Made by a program: the position numbers and the translations under genes
Assembly: GCA_002269645.1 (NCBI GenBank)
Contig: NIVC01000272.1
Coordinates: 186,001-250,000 of the forward strand
Length of the DNA: 64,000 nucleotides
Origin: Macrostomum lignano
Lineage: Eukaryota
Direction: 5' to 3'
The notes under the pieces: model-generated
What the model was told of the DNA's origin: nothing
Database searches by the model: none
The model's input: only the letters and a program-made list of their open reading frames with translations
Part shown: one piece after another, positions 10,001-56,498 of the stretch
Numbering within the stretch: position 1 is the first letter of the stretch
Layout of the letters: each line of letters starts with the position of its first letter

Positions 10001-13000
10001 GCTTTGTCAGTCCGGGCAGTCCAACAAATCAATTCATGTCGCCCTCGCTTCTGCCTCTGGGCATCGATTTTCCTGTGGAATGAAGAAAGTCTGCAAATCC
10101 GAGACCTCGAGCCCAGCCCGAGCAGCATTTAGCGGCACTTTGAGCGCAGCAGACATTTTTTGCCCATCTCGGACTCGGACACGAATTCGCCCGGCCGAAT
10201 TCGCCTGATCTCAGTGTACTTTTGGCCTGGATTGGCCCGGTCGGACTTTCCAGTTTTGGAATCCTCGCTGCGATGCCAATTTCAATGAGAGAAACAGAGA
10301 GGGGTGGCCCCCCCTCAGTCACCTGCTGCCTGCGCTGTTGCTATGCCGGAAAGATAGTGAAAACGGGCTTCGAGTTTGCCTGCCCTTGCCGTGCCTGTCA
10401 GGCTGCGGTTTAACTGCAGTTTGGGGGCGATAAACACTCGCGAAACACTCTGTGTAGCCCAGCTCCCCCCGACTGCCACACAGCACCTTTTCATTATTGC
10501 TATCAATTGGGCAGCTTAGTATTAACTGTGGCTTCACTGACAGTCTGACATTTGGGGAGAACCCTGCCTCCCTCCTGTGCCCTACTAATGTTCCACTACT
10601 TCTCTCTCATTATCTCCCATTTCTATTCTCCTTCTCCCCGGCTTCTCTATCTGCTTCTTCATCTCCTCTTCTCCCTCTCTCTACCCCTCTCCATCTCCCT
10701 CTCCTTTGGCATCAACCTCCCCCTCTCCCTCTCTACTCATTCTTCGTCTCACTCTACATCTTCTTCTCCCTCTCCCTCTCCCTCTCCTTCTCCCTCTCCT
10801 TCTCCCTCACCACCACCCTCTACTTTACCCTCTCCTCTCCTCTCTCCTTTTCTCCCTTTCCCTCTCCATCACTCTCTTCTTATTCCTCTCCCTCTCCTTC
10901 TCCCTCTCCATCTCCCTCTCCATCTCCCTATCCATCTCCCTCTCCATCTCCCTCTCCATCTCCCTCTCCATCTCCCTCTCCATCTCCCTCTCCATCTCCC
11001 TCTCCATCTCCCTCTCCATCTCCCTCTCCATCTCCCTCTACATCTCCTTCTCCATCTCCCTCTCCTTTTCCTTCTCCTTTTCCCTCAACATCTCCTTTCT
11101 TTCCTTCTCTTTCTGCCCCGTCTTCCCAGTAAACAATTTCCTGTCGAATAATTAGACTTTTACGGGAAATGTTCTATCCTAAACGCTCTCAAGCGGCTTC
11201 CGTCATCAAATCAGTCTGGTTTCAAAGCTTTTGGCGAATTTCAAAAGTCTGCCGACTAAAATCCTCACTGAGGGCGCCTGAAGTACCCTGGGGAATTCCA
11301 TAGCAGTGTCTGTCAACCTGACCCGCCACAAACTGGCCCTTGTGAGCCAGGCGGAATCCAATTATGAGCATCTTTTGTAGGTAAAGGAGCTGTGAGCAGT
11401 CTTACTGAACAAGAGCTGCTGAGTGACAGGCAGATTGATTTATTGACAGTTTGATTGACAGGTTGATTTATTAGATGGCAGTTTGATTGACAGGCTGATT
11501 GGTTTGTTGGCAGTTTGATTGACAGGTTGATTTATTAGATGGCAGTTTGATTGACAGGCTGATTTATTAGTTGGCAGTTTGATTGACAGGCTGATTGGTT
11601 TGTCGGCAGTTTGATTGACAGGCTGACTGGTTTTTTAGCAGATTGATTGACAGGCTGACTGGTTTTTTGGCAGATTGATTGACAGGCTGATTGGTTTGTT
11701 GGCAGTTTGATTGACAGGCTGATTGATTTATTGGCAATTTGATTCACAGGCTGATTAGTTCATTGGCAGTTTGATTGACAGGCTGATTTATTAGAAGGCA
11801 GTTTGATTGACAGGCTGATTGGTTTGCTGGCAGTTTGATTGACAGGCTGATTTATTAGATGGCAGTTTGATTGACAGGCTGATTTATTAGTTGGCAGTTT
11901 GATTGACAGGCTGATTGGTTTGTCGGCAGTTTGATTGACAGGCTGACTGGTTTTTTGGCAGATTGATTGACAGGCTGATTGGTTTGTTGGCAGTTTGATT
12001 GACAGGCTGATTGATTTATTGGCAGTTTGATTCACAGGCTGATTAGTTCATTGGCAGTTTGATTGACAGGCTGATTTATTAGAAGGCAGTTTGATTGACA
12101 GGCTGATTGGTTTGTTGGCAGTTTGATTGACAGGCTGATTTATTAGTTGGCAGTTTGATTGACAGGCTGATTTATTAGATGGCAGTTTGATTGACAGGCT
12201 GATTGATTTATTGGCAGTTTGATTGACAGGCTGATTGGTTTGTTGGCAGTTTGATTGACAGGCTGATTGGTTCATTGGCAGTTTGATTGACAGGCTGATT
12301 GATTTATTGGCAGTTTGATTGACAGGCTGATTTAGTTCATTGGCAGTTTGATTGACAGGCTGATTGGTTTGTTGCGTTGCGCTAGGTTGCCTTTTTTGAT
12401 TATTTCTTTCTTTCTGACACTTGACTGATTGACTGATTAGGAGGCTGCAAGTTGGCTGAAGCAGTTTGACAATTCTACTCTAATCAGTTTCAAGCTCATT
12501 GTGCAATTAATCTACTCAATTTGAAATAATTTGCGAAAACTCTTGTTCAACACCGACTGCGATAAAGCGGATATCCGTGCTTAAAAGATGGTGCTACGGA
12601 GCAGACGCTCATCCGGGAATTTCCTATGCGCTCGGGCCCTAATTAATTATTAATTATTTGGACGCGCAGGAAGGCAGGCGCAGCTCCCGAGCCCCCCCCC
12701 CCGTCCGCCAAGGCTGCCGCCTTCCCAGCCATTGATATAATTATCCCATTACTGGGCGCCTCCGGCGCAGGCGGCCTCAATTCAGGTTAATTGAAGGCAG
12801 CCGACGTTCACCTATGAGGCTGGGAATCTGATTAGCGAGGAGGCGAGCCCGGCAAACCGGGAGAGTTGAGGGGACGCGGAAGCGGCAGAATTGACAGCAA
12901 AGATTGGACGAATTTTAAAGCTGAAAAAATTGCCCGACAGGAAGTCATTGCCGGGATAATTTCTGCCCGCGTTTTCTCCGCTTCTGCTTTGAACACTCGG

Positions 13001-30700: not shown

Positions 30701-33700
30701 TCTCTCCCTCTCTCATCCACTCTCTCCCTCTCTTTTCCTCTCTCTCCTTCTCTCATCCACTCTCTCCCTCTCTCTCCCTCTCTCATCCACTCTCTCCCTC
30801 TCTTTTCCTCTCTCTCCCTCTCTCATCCACTCTCTCCCTCTCTCTCCCTCTCTCATCCACTCTCTCCCTCTCTTTTCCTCTCTCTCCCTCTCTCATCCAC
30901 TCTCTCCCTCTCTTTTCCTCTCTCTCCTTCTCTCATCCACTCTCTCCCTCTCTTTTCCTCTCTCTCCTTCTCTCATCCACTCTCTCCCTCTCTTTTCCTC
31001 TCTCTCCTTCTCTCATCCACTCTCTCCCTCTCTCTCCCTCTCTCATCCACTCTCTCCCTCTCTTTTCCTCTCTCTCCCTCTCTCATCCACTCTCTCCCTC
31101 TCTCTCCCTCTCTCATCCACTCTCTCCCTCTCTTTTCCTCTCTCTCCCTCTCTCATCCACTCTCTCCCTCTCTCTCCCTCTCTCATCCACTCTCTCCCTC
31201 TCTTTTCCTCTCTCTCCCTCTCTCATCCACTCTCTCCCTCTGTCTCCCTCTCTCTTCCTCTCTTTTCCTCTCTCTCCCTCTCTCATCCACTCTCTCCCTC
31301 TCTCTCCCTCTCTCTCCCTCTCTTTTCCTCTCTCTCCCTCTCTCTTTCACTCTCTGCCTCTCTCTCCCTCTGTCTCTCCCTCTTGCCCCTCTATCCCACT
31401 CTCTCTTACTCTCTCTCCTCTCCCTCTCCCTCTCCCCTGCTTTTTCCTGCCAGTGTCAGGTGATTTTTGTGAACACAAAACTTTCCTTAAGCAGCCGCGC
31501 TAAGGCGACTTCCGGCCCCCCCCCTCTAACGACGCACCAACTTTGAAATGATTGTGCCGTGTTCAATATTTTGTTACCGAAAATCAAACGCATTATGAAA
31601 CAATTTTTATTGGCACTAAACATTGGCCCTCAGTCTTGCAAGTTTCCCAGCGACATCACTATTGCACCTGTGCACTGCAATTGTTCCTTGTAGCGACCTG
31701 ATTTTCATTTTCTCAGGGCACCTAGCAACCTCTAATAATCCAAAATCCATGCATTAGATGGGCACACACCTGAGCAAATAAATATTAACAGCCGTACTAG
31801 TTTTGCCTGTGTTCATCACAGTGCAACTGCACTGCTGAGCATCACTTCTTTGCACTTTAAAGTAGTTCACAAGCACTGAACTTTTGCTCGCCTGACAAGA
31901 AAACGTCTTTTTGACCCGTTTGCTAGCATGAGTTTTTTGTGACGCATCAGTGTAGCGTTTTATTAGGCTATTAAGCTAGATTAGCAATCCATATTGGCTA
32001 GATTAGCAATCCATATTGGCTAGATTAGCAATCCATATTGGCTAGATTAGCAATCCATATTGGCTAGATTAGCAATCCATATTGGCTAGATTAGCAATCC
32101 ATATTGGCTAGATTAGCAATCCATATTGGCTAGATTAGCAATCCATATTGGCTAGATTAGCAATCCATATTGGCTAGATGAGCAATCCATATTGGCTAGA
32201 TTAGCAATCCATATTGGCTAGATTAGCAATCCATATTGGCTAGATTAGCAATCCATATTGGCTAGATTAGCAATCCATATTGGCTAGATTAGCAATCCAT
32301 ATTGGCTAGATGAGCAATCCATATTGGCTAGATTAGCAATCCATATTGGCTAGATTAGCAATCCATATTGGCTAGATTAGCAATCCATATTGGCTAGATT
32401 AGCAATCCATATTGGCTAGATTAGCAATCCATATTGGCTAGATTAGCAATCCATATTGGCTAGAACAGCAATTCATTTGCTAGATTAGCAATCCATATTG
32501 GCTAGATTAGCAATCCATATTGGCTAGATTAGCAATTCATTTGCTAGATTAGCAATCCATATTGGCTAGATTAGCAATCCATATTGGCTAGATTAGCAAT
32601 CCATATTGGCTAGATTAGCAATTCATATTGGCTAGATTAGCAATCCATATTGGCTAGTTTAGCAATCCATATTGGCTAGATCAGCAATTCATTTGCTAGA
32701 TTAGCAATTCATATTGGCTAGTTTAGCAATCCATATTGGCTAGATCAGCAATTCATTTGCTAGATTAGCAATCCATATTGGCTAGATTAGCAATTCATTT
32801 GCTAGATTAGCAATCCATATTGGCTAGATTAGCAATCCATATTGGCTAGATTAGCAATCCATATTGGCTAGATTAGCAATTCATATTGGCTAGATTAGCA
32901 ATCCATATTGGCTAGTTTAGCAATCCATATTGGCTAGATCAGCAATTCATTTGCTAGATTAGCAATCCATATTGGCTAGTTTAGCAATCCATATTGGCTA
33001 GATCAGCAATTCATTTGCTAGATTAGCAATTCATATTGGCTAGTTTAGCAATCCATATTGGCTAGATTAGCAATTCATTTGCTAGATTAGCAATCCATAT
33101 TGGCTAGATTAGCAATCCATATTGGCTAGATTAGCAATCCATATTGGCTAGATTAGCAATCCATATTGGCTAGATTAGCAATTCATATTGGCTAGATTAG
33201 CAATCCATATTGGCTAGTTTAGCAATCCATATTGGCTAGATCAGCAATTCATTTGCTAGATTAGCAATTCATATTGGCTAGTTTAGCAATCCATATTGGC
33301 TAGATCAGCAATTCATTTGCTAGATTAGCAATCCATATTGGCTAGATTAGCAATTCATTTGCTAGATTAGCAATCCATATTGGCTAGATTAGCAATCCAT
33401 ATTGGCTAGATTAGCAATCCATATTGGCTAGATTAGCAATCCATATTGGCTAGATTAGCAATTCATATTGGCTAGATTAGCAATCCATATTGGCTAGTTT
33501 AGCAATCCATATTGGCTAGATCAGCAATTCATTTGCTAGATTAGCAATCCATATTGGCTAGTTTAGCAATCCATATTGGCTAGATCAGCAATTCATTTGC
33601 TAGATTAGCAATCCATATTGGCTAGTTTAGCAATCCATATTGGCTAGATCAGCAATCCATATTGGCTAGATCAGCAATTCATTTGCTAGATTAGCAATCT

Positions 33701-36700
33701 ATTGAGCAATCCATAGACTAATCAAGAGAAAACCTATATTATTAACAATTGCACGGTTTACACAAAGAGTTTTTTCAAACGAGACACTAACACCGAACAC
33801 AAATGATCGATTGCAAGTGAAATTATTGTCAAACATCGCCAAAATGCAAGTCTTCCTTAACCAATACAGTTCCTGAATTTTCATTTTCAAATTGGTCTGC
33901 ATGCTTTGCAAAATTGCCCAACTGATTCCAGAAAATTTTGGAATAAAAAGGACGTCCCCACCAAAATCTCCCATCACCAGGTAAACGTCATCTTCGACGA
34001 CATGGTGATCAAGATGCTGACCATTAAGCAGCCTGCCCAGCTCATCAGCCGGACTTTGTACCTGGGCGGTCACAGGTCGGTGCTTCATCAATACGCAGGC
34101 ATCGAATTCTTCAAGGGCTGCATGAGAGAGGTGAGAGACTGTTCCTATTCCCAGTCAAGCCCAACAACATGACAACATGACAACATAACACAACAACATG
34201 ACAACACAACAACATGACAACACAACAACATGACAACACAGAAACATGACAATACAACAACACAACAACAGGACAACACAACAACATGACAACACAACAA
34301 CAGTACAACACAACAGCATGACAACACATAAGCAGGACAACACAACAACAGGACAACACAACAAAAGTTCAACACAACAACAGTACAACACAACAACAGG
34401 ACAACACAACAAAAGTGCAACACAACAACAGTACAACACAACAACAGGACAACACAACAAAAGTACAACACAACAACAGTACAACATAACAACAGGACAA
34501 CACAACAACAGGACAGCACAACAAAAGTACAACACAACAACAGTACAACACAACAACAGGACAACACAACAACAGGACAACATAACAACAGGACAACACA
34601 ACAACGCGGTAGACGCATCTGACTCTCGCGCCGCGACCCCTGGTTTAATTCCATGCGCGGCCCCCGCATTCATTTGGGACTTGTGTGCACCGAAAATATG
34701 CCAGGTCGGTTGTCGTGCGATTCGCACCTAGAAGGGCCAACCCCCAAGGCGCAGAGTCTGTTGCATACCTGACGATTAGAAAGTCCGGGCCGGTGTACAC
34801 CCGGTGTGAGTGAGCGTATGAGTGCGTCCACGGTCGCCTCTGTCGATGGGCCGACGGGCCGACGGGCTATGAGCAGGCCGACGGTCGCCTCGACAAGTTT
34901 TGTTAAACTGCATAGCGGCCGTCCTCCTTGATATCGATTGGCTAAACTGGGCAGCAGTGCACAGACAGTTGGCAGCCAGGTGCTTGGAACTGAATGCCCA
35001 TCAAGTGAGAATCCATCGGGAGCAGAATTCTGTCCCAGATTCCCATGAGCAGCTTCCCCTCTGTGGGAGAATCGATTATTCACTGAGCCGCGTGGTGCAG
35101 CTCGCTAATTCGGCCGTGGAATCTTCATCATCGGCCGGCCCAGCCTCTCCTGAGTAGATTAAGCAGATTTCGAGATTTCGCACTTCAGCCGAGTCGAACA
35201 GCTTTGTGAGCTCAGTAGAGAGGAAGAGAGGAAATCAGCTGCTCAAGGAAGGATGCTGGGGAGGAGGCGCGATTTGATGAAGCGAGGGAAGGGAAGAAAC
35301 AAGTTCGGCGAGACTCAATGGCAACTCCGTGTTTCTTTCGGAAGTTTTTGAGGCACCTGAGCTTCATCTGACTGACGCGAAATTGTTTGAGTTTGAGCTT
35401 GGGCCACAGCTTCCTGGCGTCCGACATCTGCCACCCCTTCAGAGCACTTCAGTTTGGTAGCTCTCCGTTTTCACCTTCAGACCTCCTCATTCCCGACCTC
35501 TCAGATTCCCCCACAGCTCATTCCCGACCCCTCAGATTCCCCCACAGCTCATTACCGACCCCCCAGATTCCCCCACAGCTCATTCCCGACCCCTCAGATT
35601 CCCCTACAGCTCATTCCCGACCCCTCAGATTCCCCACTGCTCATTACTGACCCCTCAGCTTCCCCACTGCTCATTCCCGACCCCTCAGATTCCCCACTGC
35701 TCATTACTGACCCCTCAGCTTCCCCACTGCTCATTCCCGACCCCTCAGATTCCCCACAGCTCATTCCCGACCCCTCAGATTCCCCCACAGCTCATTCCCG
35801 ACCCCTCAGATTCCCCACAGCTCATTCCCGACCCCTCAGATTCCCCCACAGCTCATTCCCGACCCCTCAGATTCCCCACAGCTCATTACCGACCCCTCAG
35901 ATTCCCCCACTGCTCATTCCCGACCCCTCAGATCCCCCCACAGCTCATTCCCGACCCCTCAGATTCCCCCACAGCTCATTCCCGACCCCTCAGATCCCCC
36001 CACAGCTCATTCCCGACCCCTCAGATTCCCCCACAGCTCATTACCGACCCCTCAGATTCCCCCACAGCTCATTCCCGACCCCTCAAATTCCCCCACAGCT
36101 CATTCCCGACCCCTCAGATTCCCCACAGCTGATTCCCGACCCCTCAGATTCCCTCTTCAGCTGATTCCCTACCATACTCTAAGTTACAGTGAAAGGCACA
36201 CATAATATGGCACAGCATCGGCAGGGTGCGCACCTGTACATCCCACTATAAATCAAAATCCCAATCAACATTAATTTCCTAATCAGTCAAGCAAATGTTG
36301 CGTGCGGAAGTGAAGAAAGGTTAAAAGTTATTTTTTCCAATAGAAGCGCTTCACAAGTCGGCCAAATGAGGAAATGTCATAGGAGGAGGGGGTGGTCGCG
36401 GAGCGCAATAAAGCGGCCGGACAAGCTCGCTGAAGTGTCTCCCGGGGTCGGTCAGATCAGCTGTCTCTTAACTCCCTCCGCCACCTCAGTCGGCAGCAAT
36501 AACGCACTTTCCACCGCTGTCAGGAGGATCCCCTTGTTGTTGCTCGGCGGCTCGACTTTGTCAGAATTCCTGGGAGTCCCGGAACTGCGCCGGCTGGCTG
36601 AAGTTTACCCCCCCCCTGCTGCCGCCCACCCCCGGGGCGCCAACAGGATCGATTTCTGGCACTGTGTGCCGTGTTGCGAATTTGCACTCATCCACCGCCT

Positions 36701-49600: not shown

Positions 49601-52600
49601 GAGCTTTGGCTTTAAAAATACACTAAAATGCTTCTGTTTAACTTACTACTGAGTTGAAAGTAGCTTGTACCCAAATGTGCTGAGTGGCCTATCTAGTTAT
49701 TCCGGTATCTGTGGTTTACTTGATACTGAGTCCCCCGTTGCCACGCCTAGAGTACTGCTAGAGTGCCATTGTAGGGCAAATAATGCCAGGTTTTGCCATA
49801 GACATCGCCTAGACCCCTATTTTCTAGAGCTCTCTCTGCTGTGCCGAACTCCCGCGACCCTTTGATGACGTCACAGTAAAATGAGTCCAGATAGTCTCAC
49901 TGAGAGCCGCTCTCCTCATGCGTGAGTTACTGCCGTCACCAGCTGAGCTCAGAATCTGACAGCCGTCACCGCCCCCGCACCTCCACCTTCCACGCTGCTG
50001 CCGCCCGCTGCCAGGCGTGCTGAACGAGCGCAAATTCAAACTGCTCGGCACCTCGGAGATCTCGCTGGGCCGCCAGCCCGCCTCTGGCAGCGTCCGCAGA
50101 GTCAAAGGCGGCGTGGGCGACTTTTTTGTCGGCCACGTGTCGCATTTCAGCTTCAACGGCGTCGACTACTTGGATGCCGGCAACCTGGGCGATGGCGGCG
50201 ACTCGGCCACCACCGTGGAGGCGACCGCCCAGCTGGACGAGACGCCCATCGAGGTGCTGCTGCCGTTCACCGTCCGCAGTCCGACGGCGTTTGCTGAGCT
50301 GCCGCCGCTGCGGCTGTACACCAACTTCAGCCTGCAGCTGCACTTCCGCACTGGCCAGGTGGGCCTCCATGGAGTCGCGCTTTTCCACCAGTCAGGACTG
50401 AGCAGGGCTGAGCTGAGCTGCAGCCATAGCAGCTTGCAACCCTGCAGCCCTGCAAATCCTTAGAAATCTCCCTACTAAATGTAACCCTGCAAAACCCTAC
50501 AGCACTAAATAAAACCCTTACAATGCTAAAACCCTACCACTAAAAAACCCTGCAACCCTACAGCTTTTACAACCCTAAAACCCATCACCCTGAAACCCTA
50601 CAACCCTACAACCCTACAACCCTACAACCCTACAACCCTACAGCCCTACAGCCCTACAACCCTACAACCATACAGCTCGAACCCTATGCCCCTCATTTAA
50701 TCCCCATTGAATCTTCTTCTCCTGAAACTAGGCCCACGGCCTAATTATGTACAACTCGGGCGGCAGCCACTCCTCCGACTTCTTCCTGCTGGAACTCGTG
50801 GACGGCGAGCTGCGCCTCGCCCTCGACGCCGGCTCCGGCCGGCTGGAGCGGCGGATCGGCGCTGGCGCCGGCAGCGACACCCGGCTGAACGACGACGCCT
50901 GGCACCAAGTGGAGATCCGCCGTCTGGCCACCGACCGCTTGCTGTTCCGCGTGGACGGCCGGCCGGCCGGGCAGGCCGCCGTGATCCGGTCGCCGACGAC
51001 GTCCGGCAGCGCAGGGCTGAACGTCAACGTGCACCGGAACAGCCTGCGGCTGGGTGGCGCTCCGCCGCTCGATTTCCAGGGGCGTCGGGGTGACGTCATG
51101 TCCAACGCCGGCTTCCAGGTGAGCTTCTGAGCACTTTGCCTGAAAGCCCTGGAATCCGATTCACACAATTCTGCAATCCGATTCACACAATTCTGCAATC
51201 CGATTCATACTACCCTACAATCCGATTCACACAATTCTGCAATCCGATTCACACAATTCTGCAATCCGATTCACACAATTTCTGCAATCCGATTCACACA
51301 ATTCTGCAATCCGATTCATACTACCCTACAATCCGATTCATACTACCCTACAATCCGATTCACACAACCCTGTAATCCTATTCACACAATTCCGCGATTC
51401 GATTCACACTACCCTGTAATCCGATTCTGTTCTCACACAGTTCAGCAAACCGATTCACACAACCTTAATCCGATTCCCACGATTCTGCAATTCGATTCAC
51501 ACTACCCTGCAATCCGATTCACACTACCCTGCAATCCGATTCACACTACCCTGCAATCCGATTCACACTACCCTGCAATCCGATTCACACTACCCTGCAA
51601 TCCGATTCACACTACGCTGCAATCCGATTCACACTACCCTGCAATCCGATTCACACTACCCTGCAATCCGATTCACACTACCCTACAATCCGATTTACAC
51701 TACCCTGCAATCCGATTCACACTACTTTGTAATCCGATTCACACAACCTTGTAATCCTACTCACACAATTCTGCAAACCGATTCACACAATTCTGCAAAC
51801 CGATTCACACAATTCTGCAAACCGATTCACACAATTCTGCAAACCGATTCACACAATTCTGCAAACCGATTCACACAATTCTGCAAACCGATTCACACAA
51901 TTGTTCAATCCGATTCAAAATTCATCAATCCGATTCACACAATTATGCAATCCGATTCACACAATTCTGCAATCCGATTCACACAATTCTTCAATCCGAT
52001 TCACACAATTCTGCAAGCCGATTCACACAATTCTGCAATCCGATTCACAGCACCCTGTAATCTGGTTCACACAACCCTGTAAACCCGTTAACGAAATTCT
52101 GCAAGCCGATTCACACAACCTTGCATTCTGATTCACACAATTCTGCAAACCGATTCACGCAACCCTGCAAACCGACCTAAAACAAACAACGCAGGGTTGC
52201 CTGGGCTCGGTGCGGCTGTACGATGACACAGACCACGGCCCACCGTGCGACGTGCTGGAGCAGCGGATCAACCGCGCGATGTTCGAGCGGGACCTGACGC
52301 CCGGCTGCGAGCGGCCTCAAGTCGAGTGCTGGCCGGGCGTCTGCCACTACGGCGGCCTCTGCCTGCAGCAGTGGGACCGCCTGGTCTGCAGCTGCGAGGC
52401 CACCACCTTCACTGGCGACTGGTGCAACCGGGGTGGGTGATTGAGAAACTGAGATTATAGTAGTTATTACTGAGAAGGGTTCAGGTGAGAAGGGTTCAGA
52501 TGAGAAGGGTTCAGGTGAGAAGGGTTCAGGTGAGAAGGGTTCAGGTGAGAAGGGTTCAGGTGAGAAGGGTTCAGGTGACAAGGGTTCAGGTGACAAGGGT

Positions 52601-55600
52601 TCAGGTGACAAGGGTTCAGGTGACAAGGGTTCAGGTGACAAGGGTTCAGGTGACAAGGGTTCAGGTGACAAGGGTTCAGGTGACAAGGGTTCAGGTGACA
52701 AGGGTTCAGGTGACAAGGGTTCAGGTGACAAGGGTTCAGGTGACAAGGGTTCAGGTGACAAGGGTTCAGGTGACAAGGGTTCAGGTGACAAGGGTTCAGG
52801 TGACAAGGGTTCAGGTGACAAGGGTTCAGGTGACAAGGGTTCAGGTGACAAGGGTTCAGGTGAGAAGGGTTAATTCAGGTGCTAGCAGGGTTGCCCACAC
52901 CAGTTAGCCAACACTGCCACTCCGCACCCGCAGTCGGCAACACAACCTTCGAATTCGGGGTCGGCGGCCGGGCCGGCCGGCTGTCGTTCGAGTTCGTGGA
53001 CAACAACAGCCTGCCGAACACGCGCCGCGACGAGATCACGTTGGGCTTCCAGACTCTTAAGAGCAGCGGGGTGCTGGTGTTCCTGACCGCCAGCTTCCCC
53101 ACCTCCGACTTCATCCTCATCGCCATCGTGAGCTCAGTTTCTCAGCTTTAACTCTTCATTGGAGTGACTCTTCATTGGAGTGACTCTTCATTGGAGTGAC
53201 TCTTCATTGGAGTGACTCTTCATTGGAGTGACTCTTCATTGGAGTGACTCTTCATTGGAGTGACTCTTCATTGGAGTGACTCTTCATTGGAGTGACTCTT
53301 CATTGGAGTGACTCTTCATTGGAGTGACTCTTCATTGGAGTGACTCTTCATTGGAGTGACTCTTCATTGGAGTGACTCTTCATTGGAGTGACTCTTCATT
53401 GGAGTGACTCTTCATTGGAGTGACTCTTCATTGGAGTGACTCTTCATTGGAGTGACTCTTCATTGGAGTGACTCTTCATTGGAGTGACTCTTCATTGGAG
53501 TGACTCTTCATTGGAGTGACTCTTCATTGGAGTGACTCTTCATTGGAGTGACTCTTCATTGGAGTGACTCTTCATTGGAGTGACTCTTCATTGGAGTGAC
53601 TCTTCATTGGAGTGACTCTTCATTGGAGTGACTCTTCATTGGAGTGACTCTTCATTGGAGTGACTCTTCATTGGAGTGACTCTTCATTGGAGTGACTCTT
53701 CATTGGAGTGACTCTTCATTGGAGTGACTCTTCATTGGAGTGACTCTTCATTGGAGTGACTCTTCATTGGAGTGACTCTTCATTGGAGTGACTCTTCATT
53801 GGAGTGACTCTTCATTGGAGTGACTCTTCATTGGAGTGACTCTTCATTGGAGTGACTCTTCATTGGAGTGACTCTTCATTGGAGTGACTCTTCATTGGAG
53901 TGACTCTTCATTGGAGTGACTCTTCATTGGAGTGACATCGAGTGATTCTCATCGATTCCACCGCCCCCCGCAGTGGTCTGGCCGCGTTGTCGTGCAGTAC
54001 AACCTGAAAGCCCGCCGGCTGCAGCTGACGAGCGGCCCCGGCGTCAACGTGGCCGACGGCCGCTACCATCGGCTGCGCCTCCTACGCGAAGAGGCCGGCG
54101 TCAGCCTCTTCCTAGATGACGAGCCTGCCGTGATTCTGCAGCCAGGTTGACCTCTGTGCTCTCTACTTGTCTCCCATTTTATTTACTTATCTCCCATTCT
54201 ATCTACTTGTCTCCCATTCTATCTACTTGTCTCCCATTCTATCTACTTGTCTCCCATTCTATCTACTTATCTCCCATTCTATCTACTTGTCTCCCATTCT
54301 ATCTACTTATCTCCCATTCTATCTACTTGTCTCCCATTCTATCTACTTGTCTCCCATTCTATCTACTTGTCTCCCATTCTATCTACTTGTCTCCCATTCT
54401 ATCTACTAAATCTCCCATTCTATCTACTTGTCTCCCATTCTATCTACTTGTCTCCCATTTTATATACTTGTCTCCCATTTTATCTACTTATCTCCCATTC
54501 TATCTACTTATCTCCCATTCTATCTACTTGTCTCCCATTCTATCTACTTGTCTCCCATTTTATCTACTTGTCTCCCATTCTATCTACTTGTCTCCCATTC
54601 TATCTACTTGTCTCCCATTCTATCTACTTATCTCCCATTCTATCTACTTGTCTCCCATTCTATCTACTTATCTCCCATTCTATCTACTTGTCTCCCATTC
54701 TATCTACTTGTCTCCCATTCTATCTACTTGTCTCCCATTCTATCTACTTGTCTCCCATTCTATCTACTTGTCTCCCATTCTATCTACTTGACTCTTATTC
54801 TATCTACTTGACTCTTATTCTATCTACTTGACTCTTATTCTATCTACTTGACTACCATTCTATCTCTTGTTTCTCCTGGGGATTATCCATCTGATCCCAT
54901 TCTATCTGTCTATTGTATTCGCTGCAGGACGCGACGCGGGCACGCAGTTCAACAAGCAAAAGTACATTCAAGTAGGCGGTGCCGACCCCAGCCGGGACAG
55001 CCCGGCCCGCGCCATGCTGAACGCTGGGCTCGGCGGGGACGGCGTCGTCGGAGGCCAACAGAAGCGTCGGCGACGAAGGCGACGCCGGTGGCGGCGGCAG
55101 AAACGGCGCCGGCGCAGCGTCGGCGACTGGCCGCACTTCGAAGGCCAGCTGGTCGGCCTGGTGGTGAACGGCCTGCCGCTCAGCCGCATCGCGGCAGGCG
55201 AGGAGGCCGCCGCCGACCTGGTCCGTCTGCGCACCAGCTGGCACGGCGGCGTCCGGCTGGTTGGCGCCGATTTTCGGCCGAATTTGGCCGGCTTCCCACC
55301 TGAGGACCGGCCGGCCTACTACAGAGATCCCCAGCTGCTGCCGGCCACTAGCCCGGCTGGGGTAAGCGTTGCAAGTTGCACACTATATAGTGCGCATGCA
55401 CTCACTATGACTAGTACGCTCGTGCACCTGTTTTAGTATGCATGTACTTTCTAAGTACGCGTGCACCTATTGAAGTGCGCATGCACTTTCAAAGTGCACG
55501 TGCACTTTTATTTACCTTTGGAATCTCCTTGGAATTTCAACTCTAGATTCTGCTTGGAATTCTCTCTCTCGAAATTCTTCTGGGATTACCGTCGTGGCTT

Positions 55601-56498
55601 CCCTGGGGATTCCCCTTCAGATTCTCGTCTGAATCCTGTTTAGGATTCTCTCTGAGATGATCTGTGGGAATTATCTTTGGAATTATTTAGATCTCTCGTA
55701 GCATTACTCTGAATGAAAAGCTTGTAGTCATTCTTTTAAACTAAAATGCACTTAACTTGGAGCAACTTTATAGTTGGCCCGTCGTAAAAATAGTGCAAAA
55801 AGTCTGCTTTTTCCGCACCCAGCCTGGCCCCACCGGCATCATCGGCCCGGCAGTCCAGTGCGCGTCTGCCGACGGCTGCGACACCCGCGAGGGCCCCGGC
55901 AGCAGCGGAGGAAGCGGCATCATCGTCCCGGCGGACTACAGGACCGGCAACTCTGACGGGTGATCAGCTTTGGGACAGCTTTGGAATTGACTGAGTCAGG
56001 GTTGTAGTTGGCTGAGTCAGGGTTGTAGTTGGCTGAGTCAGGGTTGGAGTTGGCTGAGTCAGGGTTGGAGTTGGCTGAGTCAGGGTTGGAGTTGGCTGAG
56101 TCAGATGTAAGGCTCGAGGCGGTTGAGTTCACTGGTTCCACATCACCGATTCCAGAGATCCGGACGCGGCTCAGGCGACGAAGCCGCCGTCAACCAGCGG
56201 CGGGGACTCGAACGCTGAGGGCGGCGGCAAAGGCGGCAAGCAGCCTCAGTCAGCCAAGATTGACATCTTCATCATCGTGATTGTCGCCGCGGCCGGAGCG
56301 GTGCTGCTGCTGGTGTTTTTCTGCCTGATCTACCGCTGCCGCAGCAAAAACGAGGGCTCGTACCGGGTGGACGAGACGCAGAACTTCGCCGAGGACCCAG
56401 CGCTGAAGCCGTTGCGGGGCGGCCTGCACCAGTCCAACGGCGACGTGCGGACTAAAATTGCGTCGAAGAAACGCGACATCAAGGAGTGGTACGTGTGA
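3178..56498 (+). CDS. Nrx-1: alpha-neurexin, complete 16-exon gene model: join(3178..4015,24260..24406,26943..27133,33981..34130,38795..39157,39724..40213,42284..42507,46778..46892,50015..50358,50732..51118,52195..52432,52934..53127,53974..54145,54928..55361,55823..55959,56156..56498), 1588 aa
   Basis: Manual splicing gives GT-AG at all 15 introns, matching phases and a 4767-nt open frame. Domain order is SP-LNS1-EGF-LNS2-LNS3-EGF-LNS4-LNS5-EGF-LNS6-Cys [19 protein letters not shown], which is diagnostic of alpha-neurexin (KEWYV as in invertebrate Nrx-1). Confidence 0.95.
7410..8233. repeat. 25-bp minisatellite, about 33 near-perfect copies
   Basis: Unit ctgccactgcagatctccctccact. Confidence 0.97.
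8234..9449. repeat. 12-bp minisatellite (cactctgcctct and variants)
   Basis: Continues directly from the 25-mer array. Confidence 0.97.
9546..9813. repeat. 12-bp minisatellite (gagtgagacgga)
   Basis: About 20 perfect copies from 9571. Confidence 0.97.
10600..11115. repeat. CT-rich repeat with 12-bp ctctccatctcc units
   Basis: Direct inspection. Confidence 0.9.
11425..12373. repeat. about 35-39-bp minisatellite (ggcagtttgattgacaggctgatt + variable spacer)
   Basis: Direct inspection. Confidence 0.93.
13100..13925. repeat. 12-bp pyrimidine-rich minisatellite (ccctgtcctcct/ccctgtccttct)
   Basis: Direct inspection. Confidence 0.95.
16281..17325. repeat. 40-bp minisatellite, about 26 copies
   Basis: Unit tggattgctaatctagcctatcatgggtgcaggaatagaa. 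Confidence 0.97.
17745..18510. repeat. 12-bp minisatellite (gagacacactgg / gagacacaatga), degenerate at its 5' end
   Basis: Direct inspection. Confidence 0.95.
18519..19772. repeat. 20/22-bp minisatellite (cagcaggaacagaagcagaa[ca]), left arm
   Basis: Direct inspection; interrupted by the LINE. Confidence 0.96.
19773..20417 (+). mobile_element. 5'-truncated non-LTR retrotransposon (RNase H + CCHC zinc knuckle; I/R1/Loa/Tad1-type)
   Basis: Open frame 19778..20392: [34 protein letters not shown] (RNase H C-terminal half), then [17 protein letters not shown] (CX2CX7HX4C), stop, and a short GAA/A-rich tail. Flanked on both sides by agaacacagcag. Confidence 0.88.
20418..20540. repeat. 20/22-bp minisatellite, right arm after the LINE
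   Basis: Same unit as 18519..19772. Confidence 0.93.
22077..23380. repeat. 12-bp minisatellite (gagacacactgg family), second array
   Basis: Same units and orientation as 17745..18510. Confidence 0.96.
24260..24406 (+). CDS. Nrx-1: neurexin exon 2: start of LNS2
   Basis: ctcccctgcag acceptor; [50 protein letters not shown]; donor G|GTGAGT; phase 1-1. Confidence 0.92.
24415..24910. repeat. 21-bp minisatellite (ccgggatgtgggattgagaat) starting just after the exon 2 donor
   Basis: Direct inspection. Confidence 0.94.
25853..26830. repeat. 16-bp minisatellite (cagctaccccacaccc) with cagctaac variants
   Basis: Ends about 110 nt before the exon 3 acceptor. Confidence 0.95.
26943..27133 (+). CDS. 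Nrx-1: neurexin exon 3: LNS2
   Basis: ctcctgccgcag acceptor; [36 protein letters not shown]; donor AAG|GTAAGC; phase 1-0. Confidence 0.92.
27655..27708. repeat. (CT)n microsatellite
   Basis: Direct inspection. Confidence 0.95.
28175..29830. repeat. complex 9-18-bp minisatellite (tgtgtccgggtg/tccgaatg/tttgactg) with a 496-bp higher-order duplication
   Basis: Near-identical ORFs at 28420 and 28916. Confidence 0.92.
30483..31440. repeat. CT-rich minisatellite (tctcatccactctctccctc/tcttttcctc)
   Basis: Direct inspection. Confidence 0.93.
31975..33700. repeat. 22-bp minisatellite (gctagattagcaatccatattg), about 78 copies
   Basis: Direct inspection; shares an inverted 19-bp core with 16281..17325. 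Confidence 0.97.
33981..34130 (+). CDS. Nrx-1: neurexin exon 4: LNS2
   Basis: catcaccag acceptor; [21 protein letters not shown]; donor GAG|GTGAGA; phase 0-0. Confidence 0.9.
34162..34605. repeat. CA-rich minisatellite (caacacaacaacaggac-type) just after the exon 4 donor
   Basis: Direct inspection. Confidence 0.92.
34605..34900 (+). mobile_element. probable tRNA-derived SINE or tRNA-Glu-like pseudogene head, with unresolved 3' boundary
   Basis: ggtagacgcatctgactctcgcgccgcgacccctggtttaattcc resembles the anticodon arm, variable loop and T-arm of tRNA-Glu(CTC), with a degenerate B-box at 34642..34652. The 5' end/A-box is missing and a non-tRNA body follows. Confidence 0.4.
35485..36170. repeat. 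30/31-bp minisatellite (attcccccacagctcattcccgacccctcag)
   Basis: Direct inspection. Confidence 0.94.
36825..37810. repeat. CT-rich 12/14-bp minisatellite (ctatctccctcc, ctgtctctctcc) plus (CT)n
   Basis: Direct inspection. Confidence 0.93.
38215..38697. repeat. 28-bp minisatellite (cccagtcaaagagtcacgtgaatctaat), about 17 copies
   Basis: Ends about 100 nt before exon 5. Confidence 0.95.
38795..39157 (+). CDS. Nrx-1: neurexin exon 5: end of LNS2, start of LNS3
   Basis: cttcctcgccag acceptor; [45 protein letters not shown]; donor CAG|GTGAGA. Confidence 0.92.
39158..39545. repeat. GAGAT/GTGAGAT degenerate repeat starting at the exon 5 donor
   Basis: Direct inspection. Confidence 0.9.
39724..40213 (+). 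CDS. Nrx-1: neurexin exon 6: LNS3 and EGF2
   Basis: ctctccccgccag acceptor; [46 protein letters not shown]; donor A|GTGAGT, phase 1. Confidence 0.93.
40195..40326 (+). repeat. 34-bp x4 tandem repeat spanning the exon 6/intron 6 junction
   Basis: Unit ggggagacctgctcggaca|gtgagttcgggttgt. Confidence 0.95.
40327..40815. repeat. 19/20-bp minisatellite (ccctccacaccgatgtgac[c])
   Basis: Direct inspection. Confidence 0.94.
42284..42507 (+). CDS. Nrx-1: neurexin exon 7: LNS4
   Basis: ccctgtttcag acceptor; [31 protein letters not shown]; donor AAG|GTGAGG. Confidence 0.92.
42498..43045 (+). repeat. G-rich 19-bp (gggaacctcagggcggatg) then 23-bp (gggaaccaaggtgagggcggatg) array beginning at the exon 7 donor
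   Basis: Direct inspection. Confidence 0.95.
43455..44605. repeat. GA-rich compound minisatellite (gagagagggagat; gagagaagtgtacagaagagggt)
   Basis: Direct inspection. Confidence 0.93.
46405..46720. repeat. 43-bp C-rich minisatellite, about 7 copies
   Basis: Unit cagaccctcctcacacctcagccctgcacccacctccctcccc; ends about 57 nt before exon 8. Confidence 0.92.
46778..46892 (+). CDS. Nrx-1: neurexin exon 8: LNS4
   Basis: ttccgcag acceptor; [32 protein letters not shown]; donor A|GTGAGC, phase 1. Confidence 0.92.
47806..48457. repeat. 8/10-bp minisatellite (ataggtgtac)
   Basis: Direct inspection. Confidence 0.94.
50015..50358 (+). CDS. Nrx-1: neurexin exon 9: end of LNS4, start of LNS5
   Basis: ccgctgccag acceptor; [47 protein letters not shown]; donor CAG|GTGGGC. 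Confidence 0.9.
50480..50690. repeat. 8-bp repeat (ccctacaa; TTGTAGGG on the - strand), degenerate at its 5' end
   Basis: Direct inspection. Confidence 0.85.
50732..51118 (+). CDS. Nrx-1: neurexin exon 10: LNS5
   Basis: tag acceptor; [40 protein letters not shown]; donor CAG|GTGAGC. Confidence 0.92.
51152..52175. repeat. 22-bp minisatellite (aatccgattcacacaattctgc) filling intron 10
   Basis: Direct inspection. Confidence 0.93.
52195..52432 (+). CDS. Nrx-1: neurexin exon 11: end of LNS5 and EGF3
   Basis: [48 protein letters not shown]; donor G|GTGGGT, phase 1. Confidence 0.92.
52471..52871 (+). repeat. 15-bp minisatellite (tga[g/c]aagggttcagg), about 27 copies
   Basis: Direct inspection. 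Confidence 0.97.
52934..53127 (+). CDS. Nrx-1: neurexin exon 12: LNS6
   Basis: cacccgcag acceptor; [34 protein letters not shown] (Asp at the position of the Ca2+ ligand); donor ATC|GTGAGC. Confidence 0.92.
53151..53936. repeat. 16-bp minisatellite (actcttcattggagtg), about 49 essentially perfect copies
   Basis: Fills about 786 of the 846 nt of intron 12. Confidence 0.98.
53974..54145 (+). CDS. Nrx-1: neurexin exon 13: LNS6
   Basis: ccccccgcag acceptor; [33 protein letters not shown]; donor AG|GTTGAC, phase 1, at the SS4-equivalent position. Confidence 0.9.
54160..54910. repeat. 20-bp minisatellite (tctatctacttgtctcccat) filling intron 13
   Basis: Direct inspection. Confidence 0.96.
54928..55361 (+). 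CDS. Nrx-1: neurexin exon 14: end of LNS6 with polybasic insert
   Basis: gctgcag acceptor; [12 protein letters not shown]...[21 protein letters not shown]; donor GGG|GTAAGC. Confidence 0.88.
55823..55959 (+). CDS. Nrx-1: neurexin exon 15: stalk with Cys-loop
   Basis: ttttccgcacccag acceptor; [32 protein letters not shown]; donor GG|GTGATC (phase 2) fits exon 16. Confidence 0.75.
55991..56104. repeat. 21-bp minisatellite (tgagtcagggttggagttggc), about 5.5 copies
   Basis: Direct inspection. Confidence 0.92.
56156..56498 (+). CDS. Nrx-1: neurexin exon 16: stalk, TM helix, cytoplasmic tail
   Basis: ttccag acceptor, phase 2; [27 protein letters not shown]; [12 protein letters not shown] band-4.1-type motif; [13 protein letters not shown] ligand. 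Confidence 0.95.

What the first reader, a model, noticed from the sequence alone, without database searches (positions are those of the whole stretch)
54990..55118. Arg-rich insert ([19 protein letters not shown]) inside the neuroligin-binding LNS6 domain
Between the conserved IQVGG and PHFEGQL motifs, which are only a few residues apart in vertebrate LNS6 as I recall it, about 45 extra residues include 16 basic residues out of 18 (55062..55115). The Arg codons are mixed (CGT, CGG, CGA, AGG, CGC), which argues against DNA slippage and for protein-level retention. The run ends in RRRR|S, a textbook furin/proprotein-convertase site (R-X-K/R-R). Cleavage would split LNS6 or shed the ectodomain. 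Alternatively the loop could bind heparan sulfate. The Ca2+-site residues (SDF Asp, FNKQ Asn) look intact.
Basis: partly seen in the sequence, partly recalled or inferred. Interest (0 to 1): 0.7.

Follow-up and report, generated by a model that had tools for sequence, protein, structure and literature searches.

The report
Polybasic cleavage-type loop in flatworm neurexin
A flatworm (Macrostomum) neurexin gene really does encode a 50-residue, arginine-packed loop inside its last ligand-binding domain, and its furin-type RRRR-Ser core is shared by the worm's other neurexin copies and echoed in nematode, echinoderm, hemichordate and annelid neurexins, which suggests an undescribed processing or polyanion-binding site that vertebrate neurexins lack.

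Summary
Exon 54928-55361 (+) of an alpha-neurexin gene encodes IQVGG, then 50 residues (54981-55130), then PHFEGQL. Mammalian LNS6 has 5 residues there. K55062..R55115 is 16 basic residues of 18, followed by Ser.

The segment looks like exon, not intron. GC is 0.77 and CpG 0.19, against 0.38-0.42 and about 0 in the flanking introns. No tandem repeat is found, and no in-frame splice removes it while keeping the conserved motifs.

AlphaFold2 gives a confident LNS6 beta-sandwich (pTM 0.84). Its best structural matches are neurexin-1beta LNS6 (TM 0.91-0.93). The insert is a low-confidence excursion.

Two other M. lignano neurexin paralogs, 51-54% identical, carry inserts at the same loop. Their length and sequence differ, but both have a multibasic-Ser core (RRGRR|S, RRRRR|S). 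One paralog's model comes from RNA-seq-guided annotation.

Multibasic motifs also sit in this loop in nematode, echinoderm, hemichordate and annelid neurexins. R-X-K/R-R is about 49-fold enriched in the loop.

Best reading: an exposed proprotein-convertase site yielding a two-chain neurexin held together by the sandwich, with a paralog-specific poly-Arg extension. Cleavage is inferred, not shown. A heparan-sulfate-binding loop is the main rival. I found no published description.

The parts
54928..55361 (+). Third and last LNS6 exon of the neurexin gene (exon C). It holds the Ca2+-site Asn, IQVGG, the insert, PHFEGQL and the last three beta-strands.
   Evidence: Acceptor ctgcag|GA and donor GGG|gtaagc; reading frame continuous with neighbouring exons. 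Aligns to Nrxn1alpha LNS6. Paralog C has the same exon boundaries.
54966..54980 (+). IQVGG, the end of the beta-strand that starts just after the Ca2+-ligand Asn. N-terminal anchor of the loop.
   Evidence: one Gly of the GG pair is an invariant column; strand E133-138 in the model.
54981..55130 (+). 50-residue insert ADPS...SVGDW (net charge +14). The mammalian counterpart is 5 residues (KEQGQ).
   Evidence: GC 0.77, GC3 0.84, CpG 0.19, which is exon-like. Low pLDDT: 73, 63, 49, 58, 52 per 10-residue block.
55062..55115 (+). Basic run [18 protein letters not shown] (16 of 18 basic). All 8 R-X-[KR]-R starts of the 505-aa C-terminal part of the protein lie here.
55092..55118 (+). Core RRQKRRRR|S. 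The predicted convertase scissile bond lies between R (55113-55115) and S (55116-55118). This is the part shared with paralogs B (RRGRR|SAV) and C (RRRRR|SSP).
   Evidence: Paralog C DNA reads CGA CGC CGG CGG CGC AGC TCG; the window reads CGG CGC CGG CGC AGC GTC.
55131..55151 (+). PHFEGQL, the C-terminal anchor of the loop and start of the next core beta-strand.
   Evidence: F at 90% or more, G invariant; strand E196-203 in the model.
55063..55074 (+). First copy of the 12-nt direct repeat AGCGTCGGCGAC, read here as (K)RRR.
   Evidence: 29 of 1000 dinucleotide shuffles give a repeat of 12 nt or longer.
55116..55127 (+). Second copy of AGCGTCGGCGAC, 53 nt downstream, read in another frame as SVGD.
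54951..54953 (+). Asn of FNKQ, aligned with the Ca2+-ligand Asn of neurexin LNS6.
   Evidence: N131 at 90% or more.
53107..53109 (+). Asp of SDF, aligned with the Ca2+-ligand Asp, in LNS6 exon A.
   Evidence: D59 invariant.
52934..53127 (+). LNS6 exon A.
53974..54145 (+). LNS6 exon B. It ends ...ILQPG in phase 1, at the position of vertebrate splice site 4.
54146..54927 (+). Intron at the SS4-equivalent position. It is almost entirely a 20-mer tandem array (54162-54870) with no cassette exon evident.
   Evidence: GC 0.38, CpG 0.001.
52195..52432 (+). Exon encoding the end of LNS5 and EGF3.
55823..55959 (+). Stalk exon with a Cys-x6-Cys loop and GSSGGSG, a candidate glycosaminoglycan attachment region.
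   Evidence: Compared with the Drosophila and mammalian heparan-sulfate sites described in PMC6173057. The attachment itself is inferred.
56156..56498 (+). Last exon: TM segment, syndecan-like cytoplasmic domain, C-terminal KEWYV and stop codon.
   Evidence: PF01034.

Best explanation
The segment is a genuine, exon-encoded, lineage-expanded surface loop of the LNS6 domain of a Macrostomum alpha-neurexin. It sits between the strand ending in IQVGG and the strand beginning at HFEGQL.

By strand topology this is the pole of the beta-sandwich opposite the Ca2+/neuroligin rim, because the loop starts at the far end of the strand that begins right after the Ca2+-ligand Asn.

Its conserved element is a multibasic motif followed by Ser (RRQKRRRR|S). 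I infer that it is an exposed recognition site for a furin-type proprotein convertase, met in the secretory pathway.

Cleavage would convert the single-chain receptor into two chains. One is LNS1 through most of LNS6. The other is the last three LNS6 strands plus stalk, TM segment and tail. They would stay together non-covalently because the three C-terminal strands remain part of the sandwich.

The extra [10 protein letters not shown] run is a copy-specific low-complexity extension. It possibly arose by a local out-of-frame duplication. It adds further cleavage sites and a strong polyanion-binding surface.

Shown: the insert, its exon character, its position in the fold, and conservation of the core in paralogs with recurrence in other phyla.

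Inferred: exposure, cleavage, two-chain architecture and the consequences.
For: 1. The insert is real and exon-like. GC, GC3 and CpG match the flanking coding sequence and not the introns. It is not a tandem repeat.

2. The LNS6 core folds confidently around it. pTM is 0.84 and 170 residues have pLDDT of 90 or more. The insert has pLDDT 49-73. The top Foldseek hits are neurexin-1beta LNS6, with E about 1e-19 and TM 0.91-0.93.

3. All M. lignano neurexin paralogs found have an insert at the same loop. Lengths are 50, 42 and 25 aa and the sequences are otherwise unalignable. Each has a multibasic-Ser core: QKRRRR|SV, RSRRGRR|SAV, GIRRRRR|SSP.

4. Paralog C genomic DNA (Mlig_3_7 contig NIVC01002697.1) has the same exon layout, with the loop inside one exon. 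Its GenBank model derives from an RNA-seq-guided transcriptome assembly (PMC5730564).

5. The same loop carries R-X-K/R-R motifs in other phyla:
- Holothuria: QRRRRRRR|N
- Asterias: SRRKRR|V
- Antedon: GRRKRR|Q
- Ptychodera: KRSKR|A
- Owenia: HRGKR|Q
- Nematodes: RSRRRK|SV, RLRRRLRR|TS, RRRRRR|HS
- Saccoglossus has a dibasic NRERR|D, which is not a strict R-X-K/R-R match.

6. Across 46 representatives the motif density is 19 per 806 loop residues against 23 per 47,944 residues elsewhere. That is 49-fold, Fisher p = 4e-23.

7. Holothurian contigs of 6.1-6.5 kb, each carrying an ORF of 1539-1556 residues and therefore most likely transcripts, keep their motif. So do all nine Asterias isoform models.

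8. All eight R-X-[KR]-R starts in the 505-aa C-terminal part of this protein lie in the loop.
Against: - No transcript or protein evidence exists for this particular gene copy.
- The only near-identical database protein is P0001 (A0A1I8F6F3, from the older ML2 assembly). It reads the 18 codons before RRQK in another frame ([20 protein letters not shown]), which implies a compensating +1/-1 indel pair. That model also has frameshifts in strongly conserved parts, so I take it as assembly noise. It still leaves open which frame is right for the upstream run.
- The loop is a hot spot of length variation. It is 5 aa in vertebrates, 10-12 in arthropods and molluscs, and 16-24 in parasitic flatworms, most of them without a full R-X-K/R-R motif. 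That fits relaxed constraint.
- Only 9 of 46 representatives carry a strict furin motif.
- CpG- and GC-rich coding sequence favours CGN codons.
- Runs of Arg inflate the motif-start count, so the Fisher p-value overstates independence.
- A basic cluster could equally serve binding rather than cleavage.
- No cleavage predictor and no model coordinates were available. The 'opposite pole' placement is an inference from strand order.
Confidence: 0.5

Rival explanations
1. The loop is retained uncleaved and works as a polyanion-binding arm. A +14 disordered loop on LNS6 would bind heparan sulfate. This could be the chain that neurexins themselves carry on the stalk (in cis), or those of partners or matrix, or other sulfated or acidic ligands. 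Binding would tune ligand choice or clustering.
For: - Neurexins are conserved heparan-sulfate proteoglycans, modified between LNS6 and the TM segment. Their partners use basic patches to bind that chain (PMC6173057).
- The window's stalk exon has a Cys loop followed by GSSGGSG.
- Mean K+R fraction of this loop across 46 neurexins is 0.22, against 0.09 elsewhere. This includes lineages without a strict furin motif, for example arthropod K..KRIERPF.
- From general knowledge, LG domains of laminins bind heparin and sulfatide through basic patches.
Against: - A run such as RRRR|S in a flexible luminal loop is unlikely to escape furin-type convertases, which all metazoans have.
- What is conserved among paralogs is specifically a multibasic block followed by Ser/Thr, which is the cleavage-site pattern, rather than overall charge.
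- Binding and cleavage are not mutually exclusive.
Confidence: 0.25
2. The insert is a tolerated, essentially neutral low-complexity expansion in a permissive surface loop. It would be produced by local duplication or slippage in GC- and CpG-rich coding DNA. The multibasic motifs in other lineages would be independent compositional accidents.
For: - Loop length ranges from 5 to 50 aa and its sequence is unalignable outside the basic core.
- A 12-nt direct repeat is read in two different frames at 55063 and 55116, with p about 0.03.
- All three frames and the antisense strand are open across the exon.
- The long poly-Arg part is specific to this copy.
- Most parasitic flatworm loops lack the motif.
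Against: - The basic core persists in three paralogs that are only about 51-54% identical overall.
- It recurs at the same loop in at least five phyla, with 49-fold enrichment over the rest of the same proteins.
- In each of the two longest Macrostomum paralog models there is at most one other R-X-K/R-R motif in the ectodomain.
- Codons are mixed and no tandem array is detected.
Confidence: 0.17
3. The segment is an artefact. Either it is a retained or unannotated intron, or an alternative exon part removed from the mature mRNA. Or assembly indels mean the true peptide is not the one read here.
For: - No RNA evidence exists for this copy.
- An in-frame GT (54972) and in-frame AG sites (55060, 55063, 55099) exist.
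- P0001 shows a different frame for 18 codons.
Against: - Composition is exon-like (GC 0.77, CpG 0.19). The real introns here have GC 0.38-0.42, CpG of about 0.04 or less, and are full of tandem repeats.
- Every in-frame splice would delete invariant residues (VGG or F-x-G).
- The candidate acceptors lack pyrimidine tracts.
- Paralog C's RNA-seq-guided model keeps its loop in one exon with identical boundaries.
- All six 3' exons of the window read through without frameshift, unlike P0001.
Confidence: 0.08

Closest known systems
Vertebrate neurexin-1/2/3 LNS6 (for example PDB 2R1D, 1C4R, 3BOD, 3QCW)
   Same: Same domain and fold (Foldseek TM 0.91-0.93). Same Ca2+-site Asp and Asn. Same flanking GG and PF-x-G-Q-L motifs. 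Same intron position at splice site 4. Same stalk, TM and PDZ-motif tail.
   Different: Vertebrates have a 5-residue loop (KEQGQ, QDKGR) with no multibasic motif. Here the loop is 50 residues with 16 Arg. The vertebrate regulatory insert (SS4) lies in the preceding loop and is a cassette exon. This insert is constitutive exon sequence, starting 18 codons downstream of the exon start.
Other invertebrate neurexins: Asterias, Antedon, Holothuria, Ptychodera, Saccoglossus, Owenia, and the nematodes Trichostrongylus, Plectus and Panagrolaimus
   Same: A basic cluster in the same loop, usually 6-8 residues before the conserved Phe or Tyr. Most match R-X-K/R-R; Saccoglossus has only a dibasic RR.
   Different: Their loops are 13-41 residues. 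None has a run of 16 basic residues in 18. No function is reported for any of them in the literature I could search.
Notch S1 site (furin cleavage in a flexible loop of the heterodimerisation domain)
   Same: Works like it. A convertase site in a disordered loop inside a folded extracellular domain of a type I receptor would give two chains that stay associated non-covalently. Use of the site also varies between lineages. This comparison rests on general knowledge, not on a test here.
   Different: Unrelated fold (alpha/beta HD domain against LG beta-sandwich). No evidence here for force-dependent dissociation or a following S2 cleavage.
LAR-family receptor tyrosine phosphatases, teneurins, Fat cadherins and other furin-processed adhesion receptors
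   Same: These adhesion receptors, several of them synaptic, are constitutively cut at R-X-K/R-R in the ectodomain into non-covalently associated subunits. Some of them are neurexin-pathway partners.
   Different: Their sites lie in linkers or juxtamembrane regions, not inside an LG domain.
Heparin- and sulfatide-binding basic patches of laminin, agrin and perlecan LG domains
   Same: Same LG/LNS fold used to bind polyanions through clustered Lys and Arg.
   Different: Those patches are formed by structured surface residues, not by a long disordered poly-Arg loop.

Membership tests
alpha-neurexin | Ectodomain made of LNS (laminin-G) domains interspersed with EGF modules | tested here: met
   LNS and EGF exon pieces lie on the + strand from about 3.3 kb to 55.4 kb. 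Pfam Laminin_G_1/2 hit on the C-terminal part, with EGF3 upstream.
alpha-neurexin | The last LNS domain resembles neurexin LNS6 more than any other LG domain | tested here: met
   The phmmer best domain hit is Nrxn1alpha residues 1066-1203 plus 1204-1232. Foldseek ranks LNS6 structures first, ahead of LNS4, LNS2, agrin and perlecan.
alpha-neurexin | Ca2+-ligand Asp and Asn of the LNS6 rim | tested here: met
   D (SDF) and N (FNKQ) align to conserved columns D59 and N131. Their identity as the Ca2+ ligands comes from published structures, not from a test here.
alpha-neurexin | Single TM segment, syndecan-like cytoplasmic domain and C-terminal PDZ-binding motif | tested here: met
   [31 protein letters not shown], and ...KEWYV followed by the stop codon. 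PF01034 hit.
alpha-neurexin | Binds neuroligin through LNS6 | not testable with these tools
   Needs a binding assay. Nematode NRX-1 LNS6 binds NLG-1 only weakly (PMC11257444), so binding should not be assumed.
furin-type proprotein convertase substrate | R-X-K/R-R motif with a permissive P1' residue | tested here: met
   QKRRRR|SV plus seven further overlapping motif starts.
furin-type proprotein convertase substrate | Site lies in a luminal or extracellular, solvent-exposed, flexible segment | tested here: inconclusive
   The site is N-terminal to the TM segment of a type I protein. Insert pLDDT is 49-73 while the core is above 90. Low confidence suggests disorder but does not prove it. The N-terminal signal peptide was not examined.
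furin-type proprotein convertase substrate | Motif conserved among homologues while its surroundings vary | tested here: met
   Seen in three M. lignano paralogs and in several phyla, with 49-fold enrichment.
furin-type proprotein convertase substrate | Demonstrated endoproteolysis at the site | not testable with these tools
   Needs a blot or mass spectrometry, with and without convertase inhibitor or in a convertase-deficient cell line.
neurexin splice site 4 (SS4) insert | Insert located at the ...PAG|R... junction, in the loop preceding the Ca2+-ligand Asn, and encoded by a cassette exon | tested here: not met
   That junction corresponds to the exon B / exon C boundary (54145|54928). The insert starts 18 codons further on, inside exon C. 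The intron at the SS4 position is a 20-mer tandem array.
heparin- or heparan-sulfate-binding motif (Cardin-Weintraub type) | Clustered basic residues (XBBBXXBX or XBBXBX) | tested here: met
   Trivially satisfied by 16 basic residues in 18. Actual binding was not tested.
microsatellite or trinucleotide-repeat expansion | Head-to-tail repetition of a short DNA unit | tested here: not met
   No TRF array overlaps 54981-55130. Five different Arg codons are used. Only a 12-nt two-copy direct repeat is found, with p about 0.03.

The most novel reading that the evidence does not exclude
A multibasic convertase site in the GG-to-F-x-G loop of LNS6 is an ancestral bilaterian feature of neurexins that vertebrates lost. 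Under this reading, many invertebrate neurexins (flatworm, nematode, echinoderm, hemichordate, annelid) are constitutively processed inside LNS6 into a two-chain receptor held together only by the beta-sandwich. This would create a built-in, possibly force- or protease-sensitive release point. In Macrostomum the loop has additionally grown into a +14 arm that could grip the receptor's own heparan-sulfate chain.
Probability: 0.3. Interest if true: 0.75.

Novelty: new variant of a known kind. Interest (0 to 1): 0.55.

Why it matters
Neurexins are central presynaptic organisers. Their known regulation is by alternative splicing, heparan-sulfate addition and juxtamembrane shedding.

A conserved convertase-type site inside the ligand-binding LNS6 domain of invertebrate neurexins would add a processing step that nobody appears to have described. 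It could explain differences between invertebrate and mammalian neurexin biochemistry. It would also affect how recombinant invertebrate neurexin ectodomains behave in interaction screens.

The idea is directly testable in tractable models. Macrostomum has transgenesis, and C. elegans and sea stars carry the same kind of motif.

If the loop is instead an uncleaved polybasic arm, it offers a natural experiment on cis interaction between neurexin's protein core and its own glycan.

Tried and rejected
1. Retained intron or alternative splice. I listed every GT and AG in the exon with its phase. All in-frame combinations delete invariant residues, and the putative intron would have GC 0.77. Rejected as unlikely, not excluded.

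2. SS4 equivalence. Rejected, because the position differs.

3. PDB search with exon C alone hit only the arginine-rich motif of a retroviral regulatory protein, at E about 0.4-0.8. This is low-complexity chance similarity and was not pursued.

4. The word-indexed homologue search was close to useless here. Searches returned 1, 2 and 5 proteins and missed paralogs that the exhaustive search found. The exhaustive phmmer run supplied all comparative data.

5. Exact-product look-ups for P0001 and for the 189-aa window ORF found nothing. So no second DNA copy of this paralog could be compared, and no dN/dS estimate was possible.

6. P0001's alternative frame for 18 codons is attributed to indel noise in the older ML2 assembly, because the same model is frameshifted in the conserved Cys-loop and cytoplasmic tail.

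7. Literature searches on neurexin plus furin, convertase, kpc-1 or Macrostomum found no description of LNS6 cleavage.

8. Model coordinates are not exposed. The distance between the loop and the Ca2+ site could therefore not be measured and is inferred from strand order.
Full report
WHAT IS IN THE SEQUENCE

The window is eukaryotic. A large multi-exon gene runs on the + strand from at least about 3.3 kb to 56.5 kb. I worked out its last six exons by hand and checked them by translation:
- End of LNS5 plus EGF3: 52195-52432
- LNS6 exon A: 52934-53127
- LNS6 exon B: 53974-54145
- LNS6 exon C: 54928-55361
- Stalk exon: 55823-55959
- Last exon: 56156-56498

All have AG/GT boundaries and join into one open frame of 505 codons. 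The frame ends in a TM segment, an EGSYRVDE cytoplasmic domain and KEWYV followed by the stop codon. Pfam finds Laminin_G and the syndecan-type cytoplasmic domain.

Every close relative whose source was looked up is a Macrostomum lignano protein. The window is therefore from M. lignano or a very close relative.

CHECKING THE OBSERVATION

Exon C reads ...[13 protein letters not shown], then [50 protein letters not shown], then [14 protein letters not shown]....

The phmmer alignment to solved neurexin-1alpha structures (E = 3.6e-30) aligns [10 protein letters not shown] with IIIGGKEQGQ(1203), and HFEGQL with (1204)PFQGQL. The flatworm protein therefore has about 45-47 residues inserted between positions that are adjacent in mammals.

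Arg codons in the insert are CGG 7, CGC 4, CGA 3, CGT 1 and AGG 1. Tandem Repeats Finder reports nothing there.

One caveat for the record. My hand-typed protein queries had 9 Arg instead of 8 after the Lys. This does not affect the results.

EXON OR INTRON?

The insert has GC 0.77, GC3 0.84 and CpG 0.19, like the coding sequence on either side. The two flanking introns have GC 0.38 and 0.42 and CpG of 0.001 and 0.035, and one of them is almost entirely a tandem repeat.

I listed every internal GT and AG with its phase. The other in-frame options delete F-x-G or the Ca2+-ligand Asn. None has a pyrimidine tract.

I could not obtain RNA evidence for this copy. This remains the main gap.

WHERE THE INSERT SITS IN THE FOLD

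AlphaFold2 was run with a 26-sequence alignment. It gives pTM 0.84, with 170 of 245 residues at pLDDT 90 or more. The insert blocks score 73, 63, 49, 58 and 52.

Foldseek ranks neurexin-1beta LNS6 structures first (2R1D, 1C4R, 3BOD; E about 1e-19, target TM 0.91-0.93). They come ahead of LNS4, LNS2, agrin and perlecan LG domains.

The Ca2+-site Asp and Asn are conserved columns.

The insert begins at the far end of the six-residue strand that starts two residues after the Ca2+-ligand Asn. It is followed by three more core strands (E196-203, E224-230, E232-235). From this strand order I infer that the loop projects from the pole opposite the Ca2+/neuroligin rim. I also infer that a cut in it would leave the two halves interlocked.

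The insert is not the SS4 insert. SS4 corresponds to the exon B / exon C junction, 18 codons upstream. The intron at that junction is a 20-mer tandem array with no evident cassette exon.

RELATIVES: THE DECISIVE EVIDENCE

The exhaustive phmmer search found 356 proteins. The closest are M. lignano models that fall into three paralog groups:
- The window's own group: P0001.
- Paralog B: P0002 = A0A1I8IX53, 51% identical.
- Paralog C: P0003, P0004, P0007, PAA55861.1 and PAA88912.1, 43-54% identical.

All have an insert at the same loop:
- Window: 50 aa, ...QKRRRR|SVGDW-PHF
- Paralog B: 42 aa, ...RPRSRRGRR|SAVRTEWS-HF
- Paralog C: 25 aa, ...GIRRRRR|SSPAVADESQQ-YF

Outside the multibasic-Ser block the three loops cannot be aligned.

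I fetched the paralog C locus from the Mlig_3_7 assembly. Its exon layout matches the window's, the loop lies within one exon, and the core codons (CGA CGC CGG CGG CGC AGC TCG) resemble the window's (CGG CGC CGG CGC AGC GTC). GenBank models of that assembly come from an RNA-seq-guided transcriptome assembly (PMC5730564). For paralog C, therefore, the loop is retained in mRNA.

P0001 comes from the older ML2 assembly. It is nearly identical to the window from exon C onward, but reads the 18 codons before RRQK in another frame. It is also frameshifted in the conserved Cys-loop and tail. I treat it as indel noise. It still shows [13 protein letters not shown] unchanged.

BEYOND FLATWORMS

I measured the loop in all representatives where both anchors could be placed and looked up names for 27 of them.

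Loop lengths by lineage:
- Vertebrate-type neurexins: 5 residues (KEQGQ, QDKGR).
- Insects, a barnacle and a mollusc: 10-12 residues (K..KRIERPF).
- Parasitic flatworms: 16-24 residues, mostly without a strict motif.

Several lineages carry clear multibasic motifs at the same place:
- Holothuria: QRRRRRRR|N
- Asterias: SRRKRR|V
- Antedon: GRRKRR|Q
- Ptychodera: KRSKR|A
- Owenia: HRGKR|Q
- Trichostrongylus: RSRRRK|SV
- Plectus: RLRRRLRR|TS
- Panagrolaimus: RRRRRR|HS

Saccoglossus has a dibasic NRERR|D, which is not a strict R-X-K/R-R match.

The basic block usually ends 6-8 residues before the conserved Phe or Tyr.

Across 46 representatives, R-X-[KR]-R starts occur 19 times in 806 loop residues and 23 times in 47,944 other residues. 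That is 49-fold, Fisher p = 4e-23. Nine of 46 proteins have the motif, and 6 of 43 outside Macrostomum. Arg runs make the starts non-independent, so the per-protein count is the safer figure.

Holothurian contigs of 6.1-6.5 kb each carry an ORF of 1539-1556 residues and are therefore most likely transcripts; they keep the motif. So do all nine Asterias isoform models.

In this protein's 505 C-terminal residues, all eight motif starts are in the loop.

MECHANISM

The pattern is a variable, probably disordered loop whose one conserved element is a multibasic block followed by a small polar residue, in the luminal part of a type I membrane protein. That is the signature of a furin-type convertase site.

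I therefore favour constitutive cleavage in the secretory pathway. It would give a two-chain neurexin held together by the LNS6 sandwich, by analogy with the Notch S1 site and with furin-processed synaptic adhesion receptors. The analogy rests on general knowledge.

The long [10 protein letters not shown] run is specific to this copy. A 12-nt direct repeat is read in two frames (55063 and 55116, p about 0.03), which hints that it arose by a local duplication.

The main rival is an uncleaved polyanion-binding arm. Neurexins carry heparan sulfate on the stalk (PMC6173057). This gene's stalk has a Cys loop followed by GSSGGSG.

A neutral expansion and an annotation or assembly artefact are less likely but not excluded.

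NOVELTY

I found no paper that describes convertase cleavage or a polybasic loop in neurexin LNS6. The library searched is limited to open-access papers and preprints.

The gene is an ordinary neurexin. The loop is a new variant feature. The cross-phylum recurrence is the part worth following up.

Noticed in passing
window 52470-52870, 53151-53936, 54162-54870, 55981-56104: Each of the last introns is largely filled by its own tandem array. These include a 16-mer in 49 copies at 100% identity, a 20-mer in 35.5 copies, another array of roughly 20-nt units, and a 21-mer in 6 copies. This fits the report that tandem and simple repeats make up about 15% of the M. lignano genome (PMC5730564), but one distinct array per intron is striking.
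   Followed up: partly
window 54145|54928 (exon B / exon C junction): The intron position and phase (phase 1, ...QPG|RD...) match the vertebrate SS4 site (...PAG|RQ...). The intron is only repeat DNA, so SS4-type alternative splicing seems absent in this gene.
   Followed up: partly
window 55823-55959: The stalk exon encodes a Cys-x6-Cys loop followed by GPGSSGGSG. This resembles the Ser-Gly glycosaminoglycan attachment region described for Drosophila and mammalian neurexins (PMC6173057).
   Followed up: partly
window 54848-55303 (+), 54852-55244 (-), 54968-55234 (-): All three forward frames and two reverse frames are open across exon C because of its GC richness. These ORFs are mechanical by-products. 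One of them matches the frameshifted stretch in database protein P0001.
   Followed up: yes
P0001 (UniRef A0A1I8F6F3, M. lignano ML2 assembly) compared with window 55038-55091, 55850-55959 and 56156-56215: The database model switches frame and back several times relative to the window, including in the conserved Cys loop and cytoplasmic tail. This implies paired +1/-1 indels in that assembly, or a decayed duplicate copy.
   Followed up: partly
window 55053-55127 (protein level): The poly-Arg-Trp-Arg stretch gives a weak phmmer match (E 0.4-0.8) to the arginine-rich RNA-binding motif of a retroviral Rev protein in the PDB. I judged it low-complexity chance similarity.
   Followed up: yes
relatives P0010, P0015, P0049, P0052, P0103, P0190 (insects and, by sequence similarity, other arthropods; only three were looked up by name): Arthropod-type neurexins share a well-conserved 11-12 residue version of the loop, GGK(W/F)N..K.(R/K)IERPF. 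It has a dibasic or near-dibasic element just before IERPF, which may be a reduced form of the same site.
   Followed up: no
window 9529, 10806-11084, 13970: Other translated stretches with at least 12 K/R in 18 residues lie outside the exon pieces recognised by homology. They were not examined further.
   Followed up: no
window 32001-34000: A 2-kb block has much lower GC (0.36) than the rest of the window (0.43-0.61). It lies within a long intron of the neurexin gene. Its nature is not determined.
   Followed up: no
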